A DNA stretch of 63,994 bases, counting the filler, from Octopus bimaculoides (Eukaryota): the NCBI RefSeq assembly GCF_001194135.2. It is 4 parts of 4 records of this genome, joined end to end, with 100 filler letters (N's around TTAATTAATTAA, not from the genome) between each part and the next. Parts side by side here need not be neighbours in the genome. Positions count along the whole stretch, not along the records: positions 27,633 to 51,966 come from NC_068983.1; 3 more parts are not named here. One strand, written 5' to 3'. Within the stretch, counting starts at the first letter, position 1, and each line of letters opens with the position of its first letter. Of the stretch, positions 27,633 to 51,895 are shown one piece after another. The notes below the pieces were generated by a model. It saw nothing but the letters and a program-made list of their open reading frames with translations. It made no database searches and was not told the DNA's origin. The position numbers and the translations under genes were made by a program.

Positions 27633-27832
27633 ACAACAATGGTTTCAAATTTTGCCCAGCAGGGAGGGGTTAAGTTGATTACATAAATTCCAGTGCTCAA
27701 CTAGTACTTAGTTTATCTACCTCAAAAGGATGAAAGTCGACCTCAGCAGAACTTGAACTAACAATGGAGAGATTGACAAAATGCTGCTAAGTATCTTGCC
27801 CGACATGCTAATGACTTTGCCAGTTTGCCACC

Positions 27833-27910
<78 letters not shown>

Positions 27911-28349
27911 TAAAATAACAGAAATTATAGGACACAAACTCAAACCAAAGACAAAGTGTAAGGAGAGAAGCCAACCATTGGAACTGTATGAGATCCACCC
28001 ATAGTTCTTCAAATCATTAATTAGAACCTAATGAATCAGCTATATAACTTAGAAGACAGGTACAATATGAGAGGAAGAAACAGGGTCCAATTGCAAGGAA
28101 CACAGGAATGATAAGATGTTGGTGAATATCATACAAGCAGTCTGCCAACAGCTAAAACTTAAGCTACAAAGAGATATGGAGTTCTCAGGTCATCCAACTG
28201 TGAAGACATTCATAGGGGACAATATGAAAAATTGAGGAGGAAACAGAAAGACTATTGAAAGCTTGTGGATACCTAAAGTTATAGGTAGTAACTCGCAACC
28301 CATATAAATCCTATCAAAAATAAGACTGAACCTAAGTCAAATCAATAAT

Positions 28350-28417
<68 letters not shown>

Positions 28418-28429
28418 TGATGATGATGA

Positions 28430-29790
28430 TGATGATGATGATAATATATAAAACATGCCATCAATTAATAAAATATATAAAACAGGCCATGAATAAGTGG
28501 CAAACAGTTCTGCAGCTCGAGACAAAAGAGGGAATCATAAAAAAAAAAAAGCCATCCCCATTAGAAGAGGAATATTCCAAGGAGACTCACACTCTCTACT
28601 CCTTTTCTCTCTGACACTGAAACCTCTAACTGACATGCTAAACAGAACTGGATGTGGACACAACTGTTCTGGTAAAATAATCAACCATCTCTTGTATATG
28701 GATGATCTAAAATTGTATGCTGCAAATGATAAACAACTGGAAATATTAGTACATGGATTTACCAAAGAAATAGATATGAAAATTGGCTTAGAAAAATGTG
28801 CGAAAGCAGCCTTGAAAAGAGGAAACCTAGTTAAGAGTAACAATATCACACTAGATAAAGAAAATGAAATAAGAGAATTAGACCAAACCCAGATTTACAT
28901 ATACTTAGGAATCAATGAACTAGATACGGTACAATGCAGATGACTGAAAGAGAAGACGAGGAAGTAAATTAGCTTAATGCTTACAACAGAGCTCAATGTG
29001 AAAAACAAGATAATAAGTATGTCCCAGTTATAAGTTACAGTTACAATATTCTCAATTGGTCATTAGATGAACTAACTAAGCTAGACCGGAAAACAAGAAA
29101 AATAATGACGAAATTTAAAATACATCACCTAAAATCTGACATTGAAGGGTTATATATATACCATACAATGAAATGAAGGTGGAAAAGGCCTTATACAACT
29201 AGAAAACTACTAAAAAATATCTACCATAGGATTACAGAAATATCTAACTCAGAACCAAAGAAAACTGGTACAAATAGCCACAAAGCATGAGCAAAACAAA
29301 AAAGTATTTGCTGTCTTCAAGAAAGCCAAAAAATACAAGAAAGAGGTCATAATACCTGACAACTATGAAGAAAAAACAAAAACAATAATGGCTGTGGAGC
29401 AACTAAAATCTAAGCTAAAACTGGAACTATAAAATGCCATGATAAAATGATGGCAAGAAATTCTCAAAATACAAAGATCTGGAAATAGAGATAAACCAAA
29501 TGTGGAGCTTAAAAACAGAAACAGTCCCTATAATTAATAGGTGCACTAGGTATGATTAAGAAACTTACTGATATATACATGACCAAAACACCAGGACTTA
29601 CAAATATATATAACATACAGAAAATAGCACTGCACACATCCTACATATATCACTTTCAATATAGTGACAATAACAACACAAAAAAAAAACCCCACAGTAC
29701 ATACCCAAGGCGCACAGAGCTGAGCTTGGTAGTGCAGTGAAAGCACATGATAAAAATAAAACTACTGAATGATGATGATGATGATGATGA
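28430..29790 (+). mobile_element. R4/Dong-clade non-LTR retrotransposon, 5'-truncated and internally deleted
   Basis: RRGIFQGDS, HLLYMDDLKLY, GLEKC and YxYLG RT motifs; later KYKDLEIEINQMW..VPII-GALG (REL endonuclease end); flanked by (AAT/AAC/GAT)n. Confidence 0.9.
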
Positions 29791-30749
29791 CGATGATGGG
29801 CGATGATGGTGATAATAATAATAATTTCACTTTATAGTGTTTGTGAAGACATTTCCAATAATTATTTATATATTCCTATGCTATTAAAAGAAATTGGTAC
29901 ATGCCCTGTCCCTTTATTGATTACAGATCAATACTCTATAAAATAGTAAGTCAAGAAACTTACTACTGAAACAATTACACTACTTCATCGATTTCAAAAT
30001 AACCATTATTAATAAAGATTATTTTGGAATCAATGTATGAAAGTAATTGGAATTGCTAACCTAAAATATGTATGTGCATGTATGTATGTGTATATATATA
30101 TGTATGTATATTATCCCTTATCCCTCCATCTCTCACTATACATATATATATATATATACATACACACACGCATACATGCATGCACACACACACATGCATG
30201 AACACACACACATAATATACTCACATATACATCCGTATGCTTTGTATATTATTTACATCTAAATATTTTTATATTAATTACACTAAATTACATTCTGTGG
30301 AGACAAGTGGGTTCACATACAACTGATTTGTAGGGAGACATTGTAATTTAAATAATCAGTATACCAATGTATGTTCAATGTATATATGTCCAAAGATAAA
30401 TTTTAGAGATAGGTTGAACGTTTCAAGAAAACAGTACAAGTAACAAAAAAACTCACTTTCTTAATTATTATTGGCTGGTCAGTTTTATTATAAGCCTGTC
30501 CCCTACTTACTTCCTTAATCCCCTCCCATCTTGTGTTTTCTCTCTTGCCAAAAAAATATATATAAAGCAAGATATATCTGTCTTTTTTCTTCCTTGCATA
30601 CTCTGGTTATATTTAATTCATCCTTTTCTCCTTTTCCCACTGTACACTGACAGCAGAACTCTATCAACATTGTAACCTTGCTCATTGCTTTCCTCTCCTA
30701 ACACACACACACACACACACAAACATGCATGCACGCACGGACACACATT

Positions 30750-31175
30750 ATTCAAAGGCTTTAGAGTTAACTCTGCTACCTACATTGAGGTCCTGGAAAT
30801 AATTGTTAAGCCCTGGATAGACAGAGTATGCAATGGAAGGCTATATGTGTTTCAGTAAGACTTTGCACTATCACACATTGCTCTAGTAACACAGGAATGA
30901 ATGGGTGAAAATTTTCATGATCACATAACCCCTAACATCTGGCCTCCTAGTTTCCCAGATCTCAATCCATTGGACTATTACATGTGGAGCATTGTTGAGA
31001 GAGAGAGAGAGAGGTCAATGAACACGCCCATAACACCAAAGATTCTTTGAAAGCTGCCACAGTCAGAGTAATGTCCAAAATGAACCAGGACCACTTGATT
31101 TGAGCATGTAGATGATTTAGGTCTCATATAGAAGCAGTTGTTGAAGCTGAAGGTGGCTTTATTGAATAACATTAT
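30750..31175 (+). mobile_element. Tc1/mariner DD37D (maT) transposase relic
   Basis: RVNSATYIEVLEIIVKPW..YVFQ*D..(37 aa)..WPPSFPDLNPLDYYMW..SLKAA..EAVVEAEGGFIE*; in-frame stops. Confidence 0.85.
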
Positions 31176-32399
31176 AGAAAAGGTTTTTTTTCATCCTCAT
31201 TGCATGTTTTGATAATTAAGTTTTTATCTGTTATTATATATCTGTTTTTTTATAAACATAAATCTGTCCTCAGATATCTTACACACCCTGTGTGTGTGTG
31301 TGTGTGTGGGGGGGGGTAATGCAAACAGGAAAACGGAATTCAAAACAAGTGCCAATGCACAAGACTCTTGACCCTTCAGTCATTGTAACTTCTGGTGATT
31401 TTTATTAACAATGATAATTACACACACACACACACTTATGTATAGATATATCTTCACCGCAATATCACTAGCAGTCTTTGTTTAACTCATCACTACCTCG
31501 CCTCCAGTCCATCTCACACATGCACATATACATTGTACTTTATCACTCTCCCCACTGACCCACTGTTTACAAGTTATTGCAATTACAGCCCCTTCCTCAC
31601 TGATTTATGATATTTTTTTTAAATAAACACCTAGACCCTCCTGGCATGTTAACACACCCTCTCCTCATCCTTCTCTTATCTATGTTCAGTACTACTTCAA
31701 ACCCCGGCAGTTGAAAAAGACAATAGTAGGAACAGACAACCTCCTGATCAAAACATCAGATTCCTCAATTTCCCAGGGCAAGTGGAACTTTACTATTTGT
31801 ATATCTCATACAAATTTATAATTTCAGTATAATATCTGTAGAGATTACATATATATATATATATACGTTGTCGTCGTTTAACGTCCGCTTTCCATGCTAG
31901 CATGGGTTGGACGATTTGACTGAGGACTGGTGAAACCAGATGGCTACACCAGGCTCCATGAAGATTGAAGTAAAATGTAAGCATAGACTATCTTTTAGTT
32001 TTAAACATTAAATAGTCTACATGCTTTGATATGTGTTAAACATAATTTCTCTACTCATTTCAGTCATTGGACTGCAGCCATAGTGGAGCATCATTTCCAA
32101 AAGTCTTCTTAGTCAATCATATTAATCCTTACCACTCGTATTTATAAAGCTGATCCCTATTGAATGGGCTATGTTAGAAGTTTTGACATAAAGGGATGCC
32201 ACTCAACACACTGGTTGACACCAAAATAAAGTACATAAGGCACAGGTGTGGCTGTGTGGTAAGAAGCTCGCTTCCCAATCATATGGTTCTGGGTTCAGTC
32301 CCACTGCATGGCACCTTGAACAGATGTCTTCTACTATAGCCTCAGGTTGACCAAAGCCTTGTGAGTGGATTTGGCAGTTGGAAACTTAAAGAAGCCAGT

Positions 32400-32443
<44 letters not shown>

Positions 32444-32689
32444 CATGTGTGTGTATGTGTTTGTCCCACACTACTGCTTGACAACTGGTTTTGGTGTGTT
32501 TATGTTTCTCTAATTTAGCAGTTCACTAGAGATCACTAGAATAAGTATCAGTTAAAAGAAAATAAGTATTGGGGATGGTTCATTCCACTAAAACCCTTCA
32601 AGGTGGTGCCCCAGCATGGCCACAGTCTAATGACTGAAACAAGTAAAAGATAAAGCTCCATCACTAGAATTTGGTTAGCAACAATGATA

Positions 32690-32880
32690 ATTGTAACATA
32701 TTAAATGTTAGAAAAGTCTTGCATATTTTTACTGTTCCACTTACATAGTGTATCTGTAAAGTGTGCATAAAGCTGTTTTCTTTCTTTGCCTCCAAATCCT
32801 AGCTTTTTCAGATTGTTATTTAGACATTTAATAACATAATGGTATAAATGTGAATTTATGATCAAGGTAGAGAAGCTGAA
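32690..32880 (-). mobile_element. R4/Dong-type LINE extreme 3' fragment
   Basis: Minus frames give DHKFTFIP, YVIKCLNNNLKKLGFGGKERKQ and GTVKICKTF, matching 54930-55050. Confidence 0.65.
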
Positions 32881-33059
32881 GGTTTGAAAGCAGTTGTCTT
32901 TTATATTTTACTTGCTTCAGCCATTGAACTGCAGCCATGTTGGGGCACTGCTTTAATGAGTTTAATCAAACAAGCCAACCACAGTCTGGTACTTCTATTG
33001 ATCATTTTTACTGAACCTGCTAAGTTACAGGGATATAAACAAATGAGGAAAAACCTTGG

Positions 33060-34270
33060 ATGTTAATTCTATCTGATCTGGCAATGTTTCTACAGCTGGA
33101 TGCCCTTCCAAATGCCAACCACTCCAAGTGCAGTGGGTGCTTTTTATGTGCCATTGGCACACGAGCCAGTCAGGGGGTACTGGCATCGACCATGTTTGGA
33201 TGGTACTTTCAACATGCCACTGGCATGGAAGCCAGTCAGGGGGAACTGGTCACAGCTACGATATTGGTTTTACTCGACTCAACAGGTCTTCTCAAGCATA
33301 TCATATCACCCAATGCATCAGGGGTACTCTTAACTGGGTCATACATGCATGGCTGCAATCTCACTTTAGTTGCCAGGTATTCTTAATCACAGCAATCTCC
33401 AAAGGTCTGTCTCCTGTCATTGCCTCTGTGAGACTCAATGATTGAAGGTCATGCTTCACCACCTCATCCCATGTCTTCCTGGTTCTACCTTTTCCACAGG
33501 TTTCTTCTACAGTTAGGAAGTGGAACTTCCTCACACAGCTGTCCTCATCCATATGTAACACATGACCATACTAGCGCAGTCGTCTCTCTTGCACACCACA
33601 TTTGATGCTTCTTATGCCCAANNNNNNNNNNGCAGTCGTCTCTCTTGCACACCACATTTGATGCTTCTTATGCCCAACTTTTTTCTTAGGGCGCTAACTC
33701 TCTGTCGTGTATGCAAACTGACATTACATATCCAGTGGATCATACTAGTTTTATTTCTTTCAATGTCCTCACACACATACATCATACAGTCTACCATTCA
33801 TCTTGAGTGAGAGGCCTTTAGTTGCCAGCAGAGGTAGGAGCTCCTTGAACTTTGCCCAGGCCACTATACTCGCAGAGCAGCCACCCCCACTACAGACTTG
33901 GTTGTTTAGGTAGCGGAAGTTATGAACTACTTCTAGTTTCTCCTCCTGGCATGTGATGGAATCTGTTTTCTGCACATCTTCAGTGTTTATTGCCCCTATG
34001 CATCTGCCACACACAAAAATTATCTTCCAGGTTAACCTTCCTTTGATATTGCTGCATCTTTTATGTGTCCATAACTTACACTGGGTACATCGTATGGAGT
34101 TTCTACCCATGCCTTTTCTACAGATTGAGTAGGGCCATCTACCTGAAGGGGTTTGTGATTTGACAGCCTTCCGACTTACTAAGACTTTGATTTTTGTTAG
34201 GTTAACCCTAAGGCTCTTCGATTCTAGACCTTGCTTCCACACCCTAAACTTCATCTCTAGTTCTGGCAGT
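33060..34270 (-). mobile_element. 5'-truncated RTE-clade LINE (RT C-terminus with PHD-like finger, 3' UTR)
   Basis: ORF 33769-34254 has LRVNLTKIKV and LEVVHNFRYL (RT subdomains 6/7); it continues to RRLRWYGHVLHM and GKGRTRKTW, then into the abundant gagtggttggc-ttaggaagggcatccagctgtagaaac 3' UTR. Confidence 0.9.
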
Positions 34271-34468
34271 GACTCAGCTTTAGAGCAAACCCCATTTTAA
34301 ATGCAGAATGCATATTTTGTTAATATATTTGAGGTTTGCTTCCCCAGCAATCTTCATAGATTTCTGCATGTAAAGTGAATAATAGTCAGTCTAATCATTA
34401 TAGACTGTTACAAGCACAATTTTGTTCCAAACAACAGATGTATAATAACCAGATCAAATCAAACATAC

Positions 34469-34629
34469 CCTCAGTGCTTCCAGAGAAAAGAACCCATAAT
34501 GTGAAAGAAATAACCGTGCTGTCTGAAACTTGTTTCGAATTTTGGGTGGTTTGCATTCTGTGTCAGAGTTAACTTGATGACAGTTTTGACAAAGTCTTCT
34601 CTGTCACAATGGGCTCCATAGTTGGAATG
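34469..34629 (-). pseudogene. RALGAPB: Isolated, frameshifted exon of Ral GTPase-activating protein subunit beta
   Basis: 5' part reads (S)[16 protein letters not shown] (human SIPDLHEIVTEELEE); 3' part, in another frame, reads [31 protein letters not shown] (human [31 protein letters not shown]). Acceptor ttcag and donor AGG|gtatgt are intact; 161 nt is not 3n+1, and about 25 aa are missing in the middle. Confidence 0.8.
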
Positions 34630-34926
34630 CTGAATTCTAATTTTGTTCATACATATACAATAGTTTCTACACGCTTTATGTCAACCAAATTCACTCACAA
34701 GGCATTGGTCAGCCTGGGTCTATACTATGCAGGTGTATAGTTCAGTCCCACTGAACCCCAAACCATGTGGTTATGAAACAAACTTCTTAACCACACAGCC
34801 ATGCCTTAACCTCATGATAAATTAAAATTATTTTTTCCAAATCTAACACAAATTGAATCTCCATTTTAACCACACAAACAAAGAAAAACAAACAAATTAT
34901 AAACTGAAATATAAAGTAGTACTTAC

Positions 34927-34987
34927 CTCCAAAAATGTTGGATAAATATTGAGTTCAACGTCTATATTATCAATATAGGTGAACAAT
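34927..34987 (-). CDS. PARP6: PARP6/PARP8-like coding exon 3 (R-LFTYIDNIDVELNIYPTFLE)
   Basis: Acceptor tttttttttttctag, donor GAG|gtaagt, 61 nt, phase 2 to 0; aligns to PARP6 EYGTIDDVDIDLHINISFLD, with intron positions matching my recollection of the human gene. Confidence 0.85.
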
Positions 34988-37388: not shown

Positions 37389-37486
37389 CTGTACGTTATG
37401 GATTCTTCACCAAATAAATTTTTTATTTGTTCCATGTCCTTGTCAAGTGCTGGATTTACTTGCACTTCTTCAAGCATTTCAAGATC
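37389..37486 (-). CDS. PARP6: PARP6/PARP8-like coding exon 2 (DLEMLEEVQVNPALDKDMEQIKNLFGEESITY-R)
   Basis: Acceptor ttatttattggcag, donor AG|gtatgt, 98 nt, phase 0 to 2; aligns by eye to human PARP6 HPQLDADIEAVKEIYSENSVSIR and PARP8 HPQLEADLSAVREIYGPHAVSLR. Confidence 0.85.
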
Positions 37487-39943: not shown

Positions 39944-40485
39944 CAGGCAATGAGCTTCTACATGGTAACTCAACCTGTTACACATAACCAAAATCTCACA
40001 TAAAACACACCTAACCATTTTAAAAGGAAGGACACATAGAATAGAGTATTTTTGAATAAAAGGCTGGCTAGTTATGTTTGAGACATCTTGATTTCAGATC
40101 CTTTTGATCGGGGTTGACCTGGGGCTAAACAACAACGGCAGCACATTATTCTTTTACACCATCACTGCAGCTATACTATAAAGATCATCTCTGCTATCAA
40201 AAGTATTAGTTGGACAATACCACCACCACCACCACCACCACCACTGCCACCATCATTGACATCACAAAAGACAATGGCCTCAGGCATCACCAACAAGTGC
40301 TACAACAGCAGTACAATAATTTTACCACTACCAGAACCACCACCACAATCACCACTGTCATCACCATGGCCACTACCATCATCATTGCTACCCTCACCAC
40401 CACCATAAGTGCTAATAATTACAAGAACAATAACCACACCAATATCTGTAAACATATCAAGCAATTCAAATGTCATCTTATCTTT

Positions 40486-40539
<54 letters not shown>

Positions 40540-41603
40540 CACACATGCATACACATATTCATGATAAACATACATACATATATATATATACACACACACA
40601 TATATACACACAGCTCTTTTATTGATAAACTCTAACATTTAAATGTGTAAACACACATACATACACCACACATATGCACCCGCACAAAACATCAAACAAT
40701 GAAAGTAATAAAATTAGATCAATGGAAATATTATTAATAATTAAAAAAACAAACAAACAATTATATAAACATACACACAGAAACAAATATAAAAAATTTA
40801 AAAATTTAAAAAATGCCAGACAATAAAATGTAAAGGTGAAAGGTAATAACGAGGGAAAAACGATAGAGCTGATGAATTCATTATGGTTGATATTTCTCAC
40901 AAGAAACAACGAAGACAAGCTCTCTCCCATTCTCCATGCTGCTAATTAATTGTTGATCAAGAGATAAAACATGCAAAGTTTCATCTAAACATGGCAATTA
41001 GAATTGCTAAATGGATGATGTTTTACATTAATTTACATTGTTCGTTGTTGTTGTTGCTGTTTTTATTTTTATTGTTTTGTTTTTCTTTTGGAGGCTGCAT
41101 AATGATATTGTGGTGGAGTGGATAAATGTATTGGACTCCCAATTCAGAGATTCTGAGTTCAAATATGCCGCAGGTTTTTCCATTACTTTGTTTTTACATT
41201 CAATATTTGATTTTACTTACAATCTCTCACCTATCTGTGGGTGAAAAAAAATATAGGCATAGGCTATGGCTGTATGGTTCAGTCCTACTGCATAACACCT
41301 TGGGTAAGTGTCTTCCACTATAACTGCAGGCCAACCAAAGCCTTGTGAGTGGATTTGGTAGATGGAAACTGAAAGAAGCCCATCGCATATGCGTGTGTGT
41401 CTTGTGTCTGTGTTTGTCTCCCCATCCCCACTTGACAGTGTTGGTGTGTTTATGTACCTGTAACTTAGCAGCTCGGCAAATGATATTAATAAAATATGTC
41501 CTGGGATCAATTTGTTCAACTAAAACCATGCTCCAGCATGGTCACAGTCAAATAACTGAAACAAGTAAAAAAATAAAAGAAAAGAATAGAAAGGTAGATT
41601 TAA

Positions 41604-44585: not shown

Positions 44586-44735
44586 CTCATGCATAATGAA
44601 GTCATTGTTCTCATCACTACTACACTCCGTTTCAGAACTGTCTGTACTTGGGACAAAGGTCTCAGAGTTTTCTGAAGAATCCGAGCTTTCATCTGTTGTC
44701 AGCTGCAGATCATATCCAATATCTGATACTTCCAT
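44586..44735 (-). CDS. PARP6: PARP6/PARP8-like mono-ADP-ribosyltransferase, first coding exon (MEVSDIGYDLQLTTDESSDSSENSETFVPSTDSSETECSSDENNDFIMHE); full exon 44586-44764
   Basis: Acceptor ttttctaatgtcttatgttgcag before 44764; donor GAG|gtaaga; ATG in strong Kozak context (aatacaATGg); acidic N-terminus as in PARP6/8; phase 0 matches the next exon. PARP6 vs PARP8 cannot be resolved (probably the single pre-vertebrate ortholog). Confidence 0.75.
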
Positions 44736-45361
44736 TGTATTCAGTGTTGATACTAACACATTATCTGCAACATAAGACATTAGAAAAAAAATATTTATTT
44801 TGTATTCTGAAGTAAATAGCATATGAATGTGTGTAAGTAGATTTTGGTATCATATCTTTATGTGTAGAAATGAGTGATTTTATTCTATAGTTAGCTTCCA
44901 AACATTTTGTGTCATTTAGCCAAACTAAATTCACTGGTGTAAATAATTAATAATATCTATTAATCCAGCTGTAGAAACTCTGCCAAATCAGACTGGAGCC
45001 TGGTGTTGCCATCCGGTTTCACCAGTCCTCAGTCAAATCGTCCAACCCATGCTAGCATGGAAAGCGGACGTTAAACGATGATGATGATGATGATGATGAT
45101 GTCAATTTATTATACAAAGAATATATGCATGTGTGTAAGTGTATGTAAATAAGTAAGTATATGTTTGTGAAATACACTTACATATATTTTATGTGTGTGT
45201 ATATATATCTGTATGTATGTATATTACTTTAAGCAGTTTGATTTGGTTTCATACAACTTAAAGTTTTGCAAGCCTCTAACAGAAGACTGTCTCTTTCAGA
45301 TTTTACATTACTAAATTTATGTATGTGTGTGTATATATATATATAGCTCCCCTCTCTCTCA

Positions 45362-45395
<34 letters not shown>

Positions 45396-45399
45396 ATAT

Positions 45400-45555
45400 A
45401 CTCTCTGAGTGGTTGGCGTTAGGAAGGGCATCCAGCTGTAGAAACTCTGCCAAATCAGACTGGAGCCTGGTGTTGCCATCCGGTTTCACCAGTCCTCAGT
45501 CAAATCGTCCAACCCATGCTAGCATGGAAAGCGGACGTTAAACGATGATGATGAT
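45400..45555 (+). mobile_element. RTE 3'-tail copy ending in (GAT)n
   Basis: Essentially identical to 44965-45100 and 22350-22512; other copies at 20905-21058(-), 21995-22290(-), 23365-23680(+), 25372-25700(-), 31865-31960(-) and 50920-51058(+). Confidence 0.85.
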
Positions 45556-45582
45556 GATATACACACACACACAAACACATGC

Positions 45583-45618
<36 letters not shown>

Positions 45619-45881
45619 ATATACACACACATATACATACACACCCACACAACACCCACACATATTTATATATAACCATCATTTTATAAAGTGTGCAGGG
45701 TACTTTGTTTTACCATGGCAGCTGTATTTGTGAGGATATTTTATTACTTGCAAGACTATAGAGACTCCTTGCTTGAAAGGGAGAATACAAGATAGATGCT
45801 TTATGTGAAGTGTGAAGAGAATAATGTATGATGGGAGGAGCAGGGACTGGTTTGTTGCATGCATGTGTGAGTGTGTGTGTG

Positions 45882-45918
<37 letters not shown>

Positions 45919-46317
45919 ACGTAGAAATTCATAGCTATCTCACATTTTTACATAGGTGGATGTGGTCAGAGAAGTACCAGAAAGAGCAGTAAACTTTGAA
46001 GAGGTGCCAGAATGTACCTTCAAGGAAACATGTCTAACTTAAATAGAAAAAGAGACGGGAGAATCAGTGTGTGAGTGTGTGTGTGAGTGTGTGTGTTTGC
46101 GTGCGTGTGTGTGTGTGTTTGTGTGCATGTGTGTGTGTGTGCAAGCAAGTGAGGTTGCAAGAGTGGTGGCGAGTGAGAGATGGGTATAAAAATCAGCTGA
46201 AGGTGCTTAGATGTATATAGGAGGTAAATATAGTAAATTTTGAACAGGGATGCAGGTGGTCGATGGTAAATATGAGTGGGAGTGATAATGGTAAGAAAGA
46301 GGGATGGTAAGAAAGAG

Positions 46318-49338: not shown

Positions 49339-51183
49339 GTAGTTAATTTACTACTTTGCATCTCCATAACTTAAGGCATATTATTTTCACATTATTGTTG
49401 AGGCTGTATCAATTCAAGTTGTCTTACCACTATCACTTCCTCAGCTACTCCCCAATGCCATAAACCACAGCTACCTTCATAGACATTACTATAAGATTAC
49501 AGTAATAGACTGAGAAAACATAAGATTTGAAATTTGATAGAACAAAAATTTAATGTTAAAGATGAAAGAAAATATAGTATACACTTTACCCTAACAAGGC
49601 ATCTACTAAAAAAGATAAAGGTAGGAAAGAAAACAAATAAAGGAAAATGAGGAATAGAAGGAAAAAGAAAGAGTGGAAGAGAAAGAGAAAAAAGACACAA
49701 AAACAAAGAAAAGAAAAGAAAAGTAAAGTCATCTAAATGTTTCAGTGAAGTAGAATGTCATTGGCTAGGTTATTGATCCGTGACCAAATAATTTGCCACC
49801 TAATAATATATGTATTATTCAAACATATGTCTTCCCCTAGTGGACAGTTATTACAAAGGAGATAATCATTTCTACATAATATTTGGTGGGATCAAAAATT
49901 TGAATTTGATATTAAAGAATTATAAAATGTATAGAATTCACATGAAAGACACACAGGCATATTAGATGCATTGCAATTTCAAGAGTGCATATTCATGAAA
50001 AAGTTTTTTAGTGCATTAAAGCATGTGATGTAGGTCTAACTTTACATATAGGACTTGGGGTGATTTTTTGGATTTTTTTTTTGAAAAAAATGTGTTTTAT
50101 ATTTAATCAAATAAGGTACTTCAAATTTTTATTTTTGTTAACTTATTAGGCACAGGCATGGCTGTGTGGCAAGAAGTTTGCTTCCCAATCACATGGTTCT
50201 GGGTTCAACCCTACTAGCTTGCTGCCTTTGAGGTATTTCTAATTTTGTGACAAGCCTTTTTTTCAGAGAAAAATAGAGGGAGAGAGAGAGAGAGAGGAGA
50301 GAGTGGGAGTGAGAGAGTGAGAGAGAAAGAGACAAAGTTATATAAATCACAGAATTTATTTATAATATTTTAATGGAACTTATTTTGTGAACTAGTAAAT
50401 TTGAATGAATTTGTATTCTACAGGAAGACATGATTTCTAACATATTTGGCATAGCCATATTCTAAAAATAAGCAGGAAAAAAGGGACATAAAAACCTGTG
50501 GTTTTTCTCTGAAGAAGGAGCCTTTTGAAACATTGAGATTAACTTGCAATACCAATGGTATAACAACTTAATCATATTTGCAAATTGGTTATTGATTTTT
50601 GCAAATGTAAATCCCATTCAGTTATTCAGACTTGTTTTTATTTGTTTATTTGATTAAAAAAAAAAACCCTTCTGAGATTAAAGGTGTACGGTGATAATGA
50701 TAGAATTTGAACTTAGAGCAATGTGACACAACAGATCAGCCTATATATGCTAAATGCATTCTAAATGCTAACCCTCCTCTTAGTAAAAGTGATAGTTAAT
50801 GTTAAGAAGTAAAAGGATGTGAAATAATTTGAAGCGACAAAAGATAAATGTGGTAGCAGAGCAATCCTATGCATAAAAACTTTGTTCATATGTGCATTTA
50901 TGTGTGTGTGTGTGTATGAGTGATTGGTGTTAGGAAGGAGCATCCAGCTGTAATAATCCTGCCAAAACAGGTGCAGAAGTCTGGTGCAGGCTTCTGCCTG
51001 GCCGGCTCCTGTCACACCTTCCCACCCATGCCAGCATGGAAGACAGATGTTAAGCAATGAATATATGTATATATATATATATGTATACGTACATACATAT
51101 ATGCATGTAAGTCATCTAATAGTATAAGTCAAGAAAAAATGCACTCATATCGCAGTGTACAGTATTATATATCCATTACGGCC

Positions 51184-51268
51184 AATCTTACCAATTGGTT
51201 TCACGCTAGGTATTCAATGGAGTGTAAGGTAATAGTCCGATTATATAACCCTGAGCTCATCAGAGGTA
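51184..51268 (-). ncRNA. Degenerate type-I hammerhead ribozyme motif (Penelope pLTR-like)
   Basis: acct-CTGATGA-[stem II gct..agg / cct agc]-GAAA-CCAATTGG (palindromic stem III)-TA^agat; an inverted, more decayed copy lies at 51294-51378(+). Confidence 0.55.
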
Positions 51269-51431
51269 GCCATTTTTCATTCTATAACAGTTACCTCTGA
51301 TGAATGCAGGGTTAAATAATTGGACTGTTATTTAACACTCCATTGAGTCTCTAGCACAAAACTGATTGATAAGATTGGATGTAATGGATATGTAATACTG
51401 TATACTTCGATCAATATATATATATTTATAT

Positions 51432-51895
51432 ATTCTCTTTTTGGAATATCTTGAAGCACACACATAAAACTTTAAATAATAAGATGTAAATGTCGGGTTG
51501 AAAAACCCTTTTGGATAGAAAAAGGCTGTGGTACTTGAACCTAGGTCTCCTGTAGACATAATAGGTGTTCAACCATTGTACCAAAGTATCCCTTTGAATA
51601 TCTCTATTCATTTTTGTTAACTTTAGTCAAATCAGTAAGAACTATATGTCTACAGATGTGGGTACAACATATTCTCTCAGGTAAGAATGAAATTAACTAA
51701 AATGGATAAAGAAATTCAAAGGATTGCTTTGGTACAATGGTTGAATACCTGTCATATCTACAGTAGATGTGTGCTTGAGTCACACAGGTAGCCTTTGACT
51801 TTTCCTATCCAAAAGGATTTTACAACCCAATATTTACATGCATATCTACATTCATAATTTTATGTGTGTGCTTCGGAATATTCCAAAACGAGAAT
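51432..51895. repeat. Foldback: two ~195-bp diverged inverted arms containing a tRNA-like A/B-box segment
   Basis: attctctttttggaatatcttgaagcacacacataaaa.. versus the reverse complement of ..tttatgtgtgtgcttcggaatattccaaaacgagaat; shared core gtgttcaaccattgtaccaaag. Confidence 0.85.

What the first reader, a model, noticed from the sequence alone, without database searches (positions are those of the whole stretch)
34469..34987. A RALGAPB exon sits ~300 bp downstream of PARP6/8 exon 3: exon shuffling or a chimeric locus
Seen: a same-strand exon with intact splice sites encodes [19 protein letters not shown], which matches RALGAPB. It has an internal deletion and frameshift, and I found no neighbouring RALGAPB exons. 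The junction between the two genes must fall within the 297 bp from 34630 to 34926. With the native acceptor, PARP exon 3 would run into a stop (poison exon, NMD). A cryptic acceptor gtgacag| inside the exon would instead put the RALGAPB part in frame: FLE|[23 protein letters not shown]. Inference: a captured or duplicated gene fragment that may regulate or truncate this PARP transcript, or a nascent chimeric gene.
Basis: partly seen in the sequence, partly recalled or inferred. Interest (0 to 1): 0.7.

Follow-up and report, generated by a model that had tools for sequence, protein, structure and literature searches.

The report
Dead RALGAPB exon in PARP6 intron
A broken 178-base copy of one exon of the RalGAP-beta gene lies among retrotransposon debris inside an intron of an octopus PARP6-like gene; it is most likely a harmless by-product of retrotransposon copying, not a new fused gene.

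Summary
On the minus strand, 34646-34469 is an unmistakable copy of one RALGAPB coding exon. It matches codons 965-1052 of Octopus bimaculoides XP_052822736.1 (tblastn E 9e-24) and human RalGAP-beta structure 9qwp_B (E 1.8e-8). It lies downstream of exon 3 (34987-34927) of a PARP6-like gene, in the same orientation.

The copy is dead. It lacks 86 nt internally, which shifts the frame. No other RALGAPB exon lies in the 24.3-kb piece.

Only the donor (AGG|gtatgt) is inherited.

The fragment is one piece of a 1.9-kb mosaic of truncated retroelement pieces, all sense-oriented: SINE 5' half, RALGAPB fragment, 170-nt spacer, 5'-truncated LINE, second SINE piece, SINE/LINE tail.

The copy reads T-K-L straight into E-F-S-I-P, across an intron position conserved at about ten invertebrate loci. 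It still keeps the downstream intron start. That points to a partly spliced RNA copied by a LINE reverse transcriptase that switched templates.

A distant cephalopod with orthologous PARP exons 1-3 shows no RALGAPB match in the 3 kb downstream of exon 3.

Verdict: an ordinary retroelement-borne gene fragment. A chimeric or regulatory role is unsupported. The parental locus, reads and transcripts could not be examined.

The parts
44586..44764 (-). PARP6-like first coding exon. Acceptor ...ttgcag|A at 44765/44764; ATG at 44735-44733; coding 44735-44586; donor GAG|gtaaga. Encodes MEVSD...NDFIMHE.
   Evidence: Sequence reading. The ORF is 100% identical in the exon in a related octopod read assembly (P0004, L003/L004; 82% DNA identity overall) and 55% identical in a distant cephalopod (L005).
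37389..37486 (-). PARP6-like exon 2 (DLEMLEEVQVNPALDKDMEQIKNLFGEESITY-R), flanked by ...ttggcag| and CAG|gtatgt.
   Evidence: tblastn to oyster PARP6 representative P0019 gives E=0.001. 82% amino-acid identity in L005.
34927..34987 (-). PARP6-like exon 3 (61 nt; (R)LFTYIDNIDVELNIYPTFLE). Strong acceptor tttttttttttctag|, donor GAG|gtaagt, ends in phase 0.
   Evidence: Matches exon-level ORFs P0010, P0021 and P0032 of other animals and L005 17231-17275 (15/15 aa).
34647..34815 (-). SINE-A 5' half: tRNA-like head, body and a short TA/TG microsatellite, sense on the minus strand. It lacks the roughly 200-nt 3' domain that full copies carry.
   Evidence: blastn to copies at 32249-32374, 50154-50207 and 41327-41362. 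Alignments A1 and A2 show that full copies continue past the microsatellite.
34469..34646 (-). RALGAPB-derived coding fragment (pseudo-exon). [22 protein letters not shown] in one frame, then [40 protein letters not shown] in another. The 86-nt deletion junction is near 34592-34581.
34297..34468 (-). Retained donor (gtatgt) plus about 170 nt of unassigned spacer. Presumed to be RALGAPB intron sequence.
   Evidence: The donor follows the exon end conserved in other animals. The spacer has no repeat match in the piece and no Pfam hit in any frame. Its origin is inferred, not shown.
33364..34296 (-). 5'-truncated LINE: C-terminal part of ORF2 with a zinc-finger motif and the ...GRTRKTWDEVV... tail, sense on the minus strand. 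Slightly decayed (one in-frame stop, frame changes).
   Evidence: ORF segments. Weak PHD-finger hit, E=8e-4. The LINE assignment rests on motif recognition from my own knowledge of LINE ORF2 C-termini.
33576..33677 (.). Assembly gap of 10 N (33622-33631) flanked by two identical 46-nt copies. This is an unmerged contig overlap inside the LINE.
   Evidence: N run; repeat D17, 100% identical; the same peptide LGIRSIKCGVQERRL is read on both sides.
33072..33124 (-). Internal fragment of a second repeat family (SINE-B-like, ...ggaagggcatccagctgtagaaac...), sense on the minus strand.
   Evidence: Inverted match to 45407-45459, 91% identical (I21).
32900..33067 (-). Tail homologous to the SINE-A 3' domain, ending at the same CAAGTAAAA.ATAAA point. 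It is either the LINE's own 3' end or the missing 3' half of the SINE at 34815-34647.
   Evidence: Alignment A3; blastn.

Best explanation
What it is (shown): 34646-34469 (minus strand) is a non-functional, fragmentary copy of a single coding exon of the octopus RalGAP-beta gene. It lies in intron 3 of a PARP6-like gene in the gene's own orientation. It has an 86-nt frameshifting deletion and no RALGAPB neighbours.

How it got there (inferred): it arrived as a passenger in a LINE reverse-transcription event.
- The reverse transcriptase started on a retroelement 3' tail and copied a LINE RNA back into the ORF2 C-terminal region.
- It then switched to a partly spliced RALGAPB pre-mRNA. Alternatively, it was already copying a RALGAPB read-through transcript that ended in an intronic LINE.
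- It ran through about 170 nt of intron and the exon, crossed an already spliced upstream junction by 8 nt, and switched again onto a SINE RNA, which it copied to that RNA's 5' end.
- The result is the 1.9-kb all-sense mosaic seen here: SINE 5' half, RALGAPB fragment, spacer, 5'-truncated LINE, SINE-B piece, tail.

What it does now (inferred): nothing selected. It is a neutral relic. If the weak AG at 34630 were ever used, the transcript would carry a premature stop and be degraded.
For: Identity and decay:
- PDB E=1.8e-8; library-wide E=9.9e-17 to O. bimaculoides RalGAP-beta.
- 37/40 and 17/18 residues identical on either side of an 86-nt deletion.
- No other RALGAPB exon in 24.3 kb.

Retroelement context:
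- The SINE copy ends at its internal microsatellite, exactly where RALGAPB homology begins. It keeps its 5' end but lacks the 3' domain. That is the reverse of a normal SINE insertion and is what a template switch produces.
- The LINE is truncated at its 5' end and runs to a tail that stops where SINE 3' domains stop.
- All pieces from 34815 to 32900 are sense on the minus strand. The other three SINE-A copies in the piece are on the plus strand.

RNA origin:
- In about ten loci of other invertebrates the homologous exon starts at ...yag|N GAx xxx AGY ATH CC. That is one base before the D/E codon of (D/E)xSIP. The start codons differ among several of these loci, so they are not one species.
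- The window instead reads ACA AAA TTA GAA TTC AGC ATT CCA (T-K-L-E-F-S-I-P) with no AG there, and it matches parental residues 965-967.
- The 3' end keeps AGG|gtatgt at the exon end conserved at six of those loci (L002, L006, L013-L016).
- Chimeras made by single and double template switches during LINE reverse transcription are documented, including a SINE-containing tripartite one (PMC2104539).

No sign of function:
- The acceptors are poor: 35% and 45% pyrimidine, against 70-85% for real exons.
- No protein joins the two genes.
- No RALGAPB match within 3 kb downstream of exon 3 in a distant cephalopod.
Against: - The octopus RALGAPB gene structure could not be read. The gene spans 123 kb and no DNA was returned. 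Whether octopus keeps the intron before EFSIP is therefore an inference from other animals.
- Only 8 nt of the putative upstream exon are present.
- No target-site duplication flanks the mosaic or the LINE alone. Two canonical SINE-A copies also show none, so this criterion is uninformative here.
- The model needs two to four template switches.
- The same layout could arise from nested insertions and deletions in an old, repeat-dense intron.
- The tail at 33067-32900 may be the other half of a SINE split by an insertion rather than the LINE's own end.
- Transcription and splicing were not examined at all.
Confidence: 0.55

Rival explanations
1. DNA-level dispersed duplication. A short genomic piece of the RALGAPB locus (exon plus flanking intron) was pasted into PARP6 intron 3, for example as filler DNA during double-strand-break repair or by ectopic recombination. 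It was later trimmed and flanked by independent SINE and LINE insertions and deletions. It is still a dead relic.
For: The donor gtatgt and about 170 nt of non-repeat sequence follow the exon end, as expected for genomic DNA. No poly(A) and no target-site duplication were found. The intron is repeat-dense, so chance juxtaposition with retroelements is easy.
Against: The copy continues 8 nt (T-K-L) upstream of an intron position conserved in about ten invertebrate loci and shows no acceptor there. The adjacent SINE is truncated at its 3' end, not its 5' end, and stops exactly at the fragment. All five neighbouring pieces share one orientation.
Confidence: 0.28
2. Exonised element with a function. 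The fragment is spliced into PARP6 transcripts either as a poison exon (34629-34469, premature stop, NMD) or as an in-frame 44-residue cassette (34600-34469) that grafts a RalGAP-beta peptide onto PARP6.
For: Same strand as the gene. Good donor AGG|gtatgt. AG dinucleotides at 34630 and 34601. The 132-nt version is open and keeps phase 0.
Against: Neither AG has a polypyrimidine tract (35% and 45% pyrimidine, longest run 2-3). Both lie inside former coding sequence. No protein in 5.8 or 1.84 billion-sequence collections carries the junction. No RALGAPB match downstream of exon 3 in a distant cephalopod. The open frame is what a fairly recent copy of coding sequence would show anyway.
Confidence: 0.07
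3. Assembly artefact. Two unrelated regions were joined through the SINE at 34815-34647, so PARP exon 3 and the RALGAPB fragment are not really neighbours.
For: The junction lies in a high-copy SINE. The assembly has at least one unmerged 46-nt overlap with a 10-N gap 850 nt away and a perfect 129-nt duplicate at 44963/45430.
Against: There is no N between exon 3 and the fragment. The fragment is not the functional RALGAPB exon (86-nt deletion, six substitutions, no neighbouring exons), so even a misjoin would leave a dead dispersed copy to explain. The SINE 5' half and the SINE-like tail at 33067-32900 bracket the insert coherently.
Confidence: 0.07

Closest known systems
Chimeric retro-insertions made by template switching during LINE reverse transcription: U6-L1 and mRNA-L1 bipartite chimeras, and tripartite chimeras such as WEIRD/Mg-SINE/MGL in Magnaporthe (PMC2104539)
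   Same: Directly fused, same-orientation copies of different transcripts. A 5'-truncated LINE sits at the 3' side. A SINE and a cellular transcript sit at the 5' side. More than one switch is possible.
   Different: No flanking direct repeats were found here. The cellular part is a partly spliced pre-mRNA piece carrying an intron start, not a small RNA or mature mRNA. The element families are cephalopod ones. The event itself is inferred, not shown.
Exon shuffling by L1 3' transduction (Moran et al. 1999; cited from my own knowledge)
   Same: A retrotransposon carries a foreign exon into the intron of another gene in sense orientation.
   Different: In 3' transduction the passenger lies downstream of the LINE's 3' end and is followed by poly(A). 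Here it lies upstream of a 5'-truncated LINE.
Fragmentary (non-processed or semi-processed) pseudogenes and pseudo-exons in introns
   Same: A single decayed exon copy with a frameshift, no neighbouring exons and no evidence of expression.
   Different: This one lies in sense orientation 281 nt from a real exon with a usable donor, so annotation pipelines could build a false PARP6-RALGAPB fusion from it.
Poison or cassette exons born from intronic insertions (for example Alu exonisation)
   Same: A sense-oriented intronic insert with AG...GT that would introduce a stop or an in-frame peptide.
   Different: No polypyrimidine tract, no transcript evidence and no conservation.

Membership tests
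RALGAPB (RalGAP beta) coding sequence | Significant sequence similarity to RalGAP-beta proteins | tested here: met
   PDB 9qwp_B E=1.8e-8. O. bimaculoides XP_014774728.1 and XP_052822736.1: E=9.9e-17 library-wide, 92.5% identity over 40 aa.
RALGAPB (RalGAP beta) coding sequence | Intact reading frame and neighbouring exons of the gene (functional gene or exon) | tested here: not met
   86-nt deletion with frameshift. No other exon in 24.3 kb. The real gene is a separate 123-kb locus in GCA_001194135.2.
PARP6/PARP8 gene (host gene) | N-terminal exons homologous to PARP6/8 and conserved in relatives | tested here: met
   Query residues 17-108 match oyster PARP6 residues 100-192, E=9.6e-5 against 1.84e9 proteins. 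That protein has Pfam PARP at 3.9e-13. Exons 1-3 are found in order in another cephalopod contig.
PARP6/PARP8 gene (host gene) | PARP catalytic domain encoded downstream | not testable with these tools
   Exon 4 onwards lies outside the piece. No hit was found in 27633-34468.
Processed pseudogene (classical retrocopy) | All introns removed, poly(A) tail, target-site duplication | tested here: not met
   Homology stops at the conserved exon end and is followed by gtatgt, not by the next exon's ESSNSS.... No poly(A). No direct repeats.
LINE template-switch chimera | Component copies directly fused in one orientation, with a 5'-truncated LINE (intact 3' end) at the 3' side | tested here: met
   The pieces from 34815 to 32900 are all sense on the minus strand. 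The LINE starts in the ORF2 C-terminal region, and the tail ends where SINE 3' domains end.
LINE template-switch chimera | The passenger derives from RNA (crosses a splice junction) | tested here: inconclusive
   TKL|EFSIP is contiguous across an intron position conserved in about ten invertebrate loci. The octopus gene structure itself could not be read.
LINE template-switch chimera | Whole chimera flanked by target-site duplication | tested here: inconclusive
   None was found. None is visible for two canonical SINE-A copies either.
L1-type 3' transduction | Passenger lies 3' of the LINE's end | tested here: not met
   The fragment lies 5' of the LINE (34646-34469 against 34296-32900 on the minus strand).
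Poison or cassette exon | Competent acceptor (polypyrimidine tract plus AG) and donor | tested here: not met
   The donor AGG|gtatgt is good. The acceptors have 35% and 45% pyrimidine with runs of 2-3, against 70-85% with runs of 5-12 for PARP exons 1-3. This is composition only; no splice-site model was run.
Poison or cassette exon | Junction-spanning transcripts | not testable with these tools
   No RNA data are reachable. No predicted protein carries the junction.

The most novel reading that the evidence does not exclude
The fragment is a young exon-shuffling event caught in the act. A LINE-mediated, partly spliced RALGAPB passenger is occasionally spliced through the AG at 34601 as an in-frame 44-residue cassette (RRLCQ...[20 protein letters not shown]) between PARP6 exons 3 and 4. 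Through the AG at 34630 it would instead act as a lineage-specific poison exon that tunes PARP6 levels.
Probability: 0.05. Interest if true: 0.5.

Novelty: new member of a known kind. Interest (0 to 1): 0.2.

Why it matters
Its importance is modest.

- It is a clean, dissectable example from a cephalopod genome of how retroelement activity scatters pieces of host genes into the introns of other genes. That is the raw material of exon shuffling. The likely template-switch signature (3'-truncated SINE, semi-spliced passenger, 5'-truncated LINE) has been described mostly in mammals and fungi.
- In practice it is a trap for annotation. A sense-oriented RALGAPB-like open frame with a good donor, 281 nt from a real PARP6 exon, could produce a false PARP6-RALGAPB fusion model.
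- It does not by itself change what is known about PARP6 or RalGAP biology.

Tried and rejected
- **Parental octopus locus.** The full-length O. bimaculoides RALGAPB gene spans 123 kb, so no DNA was returned. The older 714-aa model is not on record. Three word-index protein searches and one metagenome scan returned only non-octopod exons of at most 55% identity. DNA-level comparison, dating and intron structure were therefore impossible.
- **Independent contigs of the same locus.** Exact look-ups of window ORFs (59 aa at 34471-34650; 161 aa at 33769-34254) found nothing.
- **Apparent extension of RALGAPB homology to 'VETI' at 34670**. I set this aside. That stretch aligns about as well to the SINE tail (GAAACT...ATCGCATATG), and the gapped extension adds almost no score. 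Homology is secure only from 34646.
- **Target-site duplications.** Searches for the mosaic, the LINE alone and the SINE alone found nothing above chance.
- **Pfam and PDB for the PARP N-terminal exons.** No hit. Identity came from the exhaustive representative search instead.
- **Rfam scan of the piece.** Only sub-threshold microsatellite look-alikes of miRNA families.
Used only as a lead and later replaced by tool-supplied proteins.
- **PARP exon 4.** Not found in 27633-34468.

Full report
**Observation.**

All features lie on the minus strand.

- Exon 3 of the PARP-like gene is 34987-34927, flanked by tttttttttttctag| and GAG|gtaagt. It encodes (R)LFTYIDNIDVELNIYPTFLE and ends in phase 0.
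- Upstream are exon 2 (37486-37389) and the first coding exon (ATG at 44735, donor after 44586).
- Downstream, the sequence ending at 34469 encodes ...[34 protein letters not shown] and is followed by gtatgt.
- The only N run near the finding is a 10-N gap at 33622-33631. Nothing interrupts the sequence between exon 3 and the RALGAPB-like stretch.

**Is the RALGAPB match real?**

Yes.

- The 45-residue peptide hits RalGAP-beta chain 9qwp_B, residues 1127-1158, at E=1.8e-8 against all PDB sequences.
- An exhaustive HMMER search of 1.84 billion representative proteins gave P0005 at E=9.9e-17. P0005 is XP_014774728.1, 'ral GTPase-activating protein subunit beta-like [Octopus bimaculoides]'. It clusters with the full-length XP_052822736.1 (P0035, 1415 aa) and carries Pfam Rap_GAP.
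- tblastn of P0005 and P0035 against the piece gives two collinear segments:
  - parental 1013-1052 against 34588-34469, 37/40 identical;
  - parental 959-982 against 34670-34593, of which TKLEFSIPTME[S>P]IVTEKT is secure.
  - The joint E-values are 3e-24 and 9e-24.
- No other part of the 1415-residue protein matches anywhere in 27633-51966.
- Parental T965-R1052 is 264 nt and the window has 178 nt (34646-34469). So 86 nt are missing and the frame shifts.
- About 8 nt at the junction (TCAAAACTG) can be read with either side. This suggests a microhomology-mediated deletion, but that is an inference from protein only.

**Is the host gene PARP6/8?**

Pfam and PDB have nothing for the N-terminal exons. 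The exhaustive search does.

- It matches query residues 17-108 to residues 100-192 of P0019 at E=9.6e-5. P0019's 90% cluster holds Crassostrea gigas 'protein mono-ADP-ribosyltransferase PARP6' XP_034323044.1, and P0019 has the PARP catalytic domain (Pfam E=3.9e-13).
- Exon-level ORFs of other animals (P0010, P0021, P0032) carry the exon 2-3 peptide contiguously.
- Exon 1 is 100% conserved at protein level in read assemblies of a related octopod, whose flanking DNA is 82% identical.
- Exons 1, 2 and 3 occur in the same order in a 42-kb contig of a more distant cephalopod (L005).
- Exon 4 is not in the piece, so the fragment lies in an intron 3 of at least 7.3 kb.

**Splice sites.**

- *Donor.* The donor AGG|gtatgt sits exactly where the homologous exon ends (EALK|gt) at six loci of other animals: L002, L006 and L013-L016.
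It lies inside the parental codons E-F-S, 17 nt downstream of where homology starts.
- *Polypyrimidine content.* Its upstream 20 nt are 35% pyrimidine with a longest run of 2. The cryptic gtgacag|A has 45% with a run of 3. PARP exons 1-3 have 70-85% with runs of 5-12.
The 161-nt version ends in TGA. The 132-nt version is an open, phase-preserving 44-codon insert.

**Context.**

The 297-nt 'intron' is mostly a SINE.

- 34815-34647 matches SINE copies at 32249-32374, 41327-41362 and 50154-50207.
- Two full copies in the piece (32235-32650 and 41262-41575) show the family is about 430 nt. It has a tRNA-like head and body, an internal TA/TG microsatellite, and a roughly 200-nt 3' domain ending CAAGTAAAA.ATAAA.
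- The copy next to the fragment keeps its 5' end but stops at the microsatellite (…TTGTATATGTATGA). RALGAPB homology begins with the next bases (ACAAAATTAGAATTCAGC…).
- An apparent extension of the protein match to 'VETI' (34670) is about equally well explained by the SINE tail. I do not count it.

Downstream of the donor come further pieces:

- about 170 nt with no repeat match and no Pfam match;
- from about 34296, the C-terminal part of a LINE ORF2 (…AESLPELEMKF…CTQCKLWTHKRCS…GRTRKTWDEVV…), read in sense and ending at 33364;
- a fragment of a second repeat family (33124-33072);
- a tail (33067-32900) homologous to the SINE 3' domain and ending at the same point.

Every piece from 34815 to 32900 is sense on the minus strand. 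The other three SINE-A copies in the piece are on the plus strand.

The 10-N gap sits inside the LINE between two identical 46-nt copies. The same peptide is read on both sides, so it is an unmerged overlap and not a doubtful join.

**A clue to the mechanism.**

- In L002, L006/L013, L014, L015, L016, L018, L019/L020 and L021 the homologous exon starts at the same place...yag|N GAx xxx AGY ATH CC. That is one base before the D/E codon of (D/E)xSIP. The ORFs P0055, P0056 and P0008 show the same start.
- These are host DNA of various invertebrates in read and metagenome assemblies.
- The window has no AG at that position. It continues upstream with ACA AAA TT, which completes T-K-L exactly as in the octopus protein (…PATKLEFSIP…).
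- Eight bases encoding T, K and the start of L by chance has odds of roughly 2e-4.
- So either octopus lacks this widely conserved intron, or the copied molecule had already spliced it out while still holding the downstream intron. The second case is a partly processed RNA, which can enter the genome only through reverse transcription.
- Three features fit LINE template switching: the 3'-truncated but 5'-complete SINE on one side, the 5'-truncated LINE on the other, and the shared orientation. Double switches and SINE-containing tripartite chimeras are documented for this process (PMC2104539).
- A variant is a RALGAPB read-through transcript that ended in an intronic LINE.

**Points against.**

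- No target-site duplication was found. The two canonical SINE copies show none either, so the test has no power here.
- Several switches are needed.
- The octopus gene structure is unverified.

A DNA-level duplication followed by independent retroelement insertions and deletions remains a serious rival. I put it at about 0.28, against 0.55 for the RNA route.

**Function.**

I found nothing pointing to one.

- The copy is frameshifted relative to its parent and has no competent acceptor.
- It appears in no predicted protein that also carries PARP6 sequence.
- The 3 kb downstream of exon 3 in the distant cephalopod contig L005 shows no RALGAPB match. Those introns are not alignable, so this only shows the fragment is not an old conserved part of the gene.
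- There are six amino-acid changes in about 62 aligned codons. If the window species is O. bimaculoides or a close relative, the copy is fairly young. The window's species is not known to me.

**Assembly artefact?**

It is possible in principle, because the junction lies in a high-copy SINE and the assembly shows small overlap artefacts. However, it would not explain the fragment. The functional exon would be intact and would have neighbours. I give this about 0.07. It needs long reads to settle.

**Comparison with what is known, and verdict.**

- The thing behaves like a retroelement-borne gene fragment, that is, a semi-processed chimeric pseudogene. It meets the orientation and truncation criteria of LINE template-switch chimeras. 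The RNA-origin and target-site-duplication criteria remain inconclusive.
- It fails the tests for a classical processed pseudogene, for 3' transduction and for a competent cassette exon.
- It is a new instance of a known kind of event in a repeat-rich genome, of low general interest (0.2).
- The most novel reading not excluded is a nascent PARP6 cassette or poison exon created by LINE-mediated exon shuffling. It has perhaps a 5% chance and would be moderately interesting.

Noticed in passing
window 33576-33677: A 10-N gap (33622-33631) is flanked by two identical 46-nt copies. The peptide LGIRSIKCGVQERRL is read on both sides. This is an unmerged contig overlap inside a LINE, not a true gap.
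   Followed up: partly
window 44963-45091 and 45430-45558: A perfect 129-nt direct repeat, 467 nt apart, in repeat-rich sequence about 200 nt upstream of the acceptor of the first coding PARP exon (44764). It is either a very recent tandem duplication or another assembly artefact.
   Followed up: no
window 32235-32650, 41262-41575 (+); 34815-34647 and 33067-32900 (-): A SINE family of about 430 nt with a tRNA-like head, an internal TA/TG microsatellite and a 3' domain ending CAAGTAAAA.ATAAA. The same 3' domain follows the LINE ORF at 33067-32900, which suggests a LINE/SINE partner pair sharing a tail.
   Followed up: partly
window 28497-28940 (+): A second, unrelated reverse-transcriptase fragment (Pfam RVT_1, E=5.9e-7) on the opposite strand, with triplet microsatellites on its upstream side (28318-28480).
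   Followed up: no
window 30053-30216, 40476-40612, 45300-45940, 51050-51133: TG/TA microsatellite tracts give Rfam hits to mir-297, mir-466, mir-5014 and others. All are far below the gathering scores and are composition artefacts.
   Followed up: yes
L005 17231-17296: In the distant cephalopod contig, PARP exon 3 is identical for 15 residues (RLFTYIDNIDVELNI). It is then 2 nt longer before its gt than in the window. This means a different donor or phase, or an assembly indel.
   Followed up: no
P0032 (113-aa ORF, unknown species): Carries two tandem copies of the PARP exon-3-like peptide (…DIDVELHIDVSFLEV…). This suggests a local duplication of this exon in another animal.
   Followed up: no
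window 51149-51411 and 51526-51787: Two hairpin-like inverted repeats: arms of 120 nt at 81% complementarity and 116 nt at 74%, with loops of 23 and 30 nt. They are possibly MITE-like or foldback elements.
   Followed up: no
L002, L006, L013-L016, L018-L021: The start of the RALGAPB exon beginning (D/E)xSIP lies at the same position and phase in about ten invertebrate loci recovered from read and metagenome assemblies. In vertebrate exon-level ORFs (P0015-P0017) the exon seems to start about 12 residues further downstream (…|LEERHEKL).
   Followed up: partly
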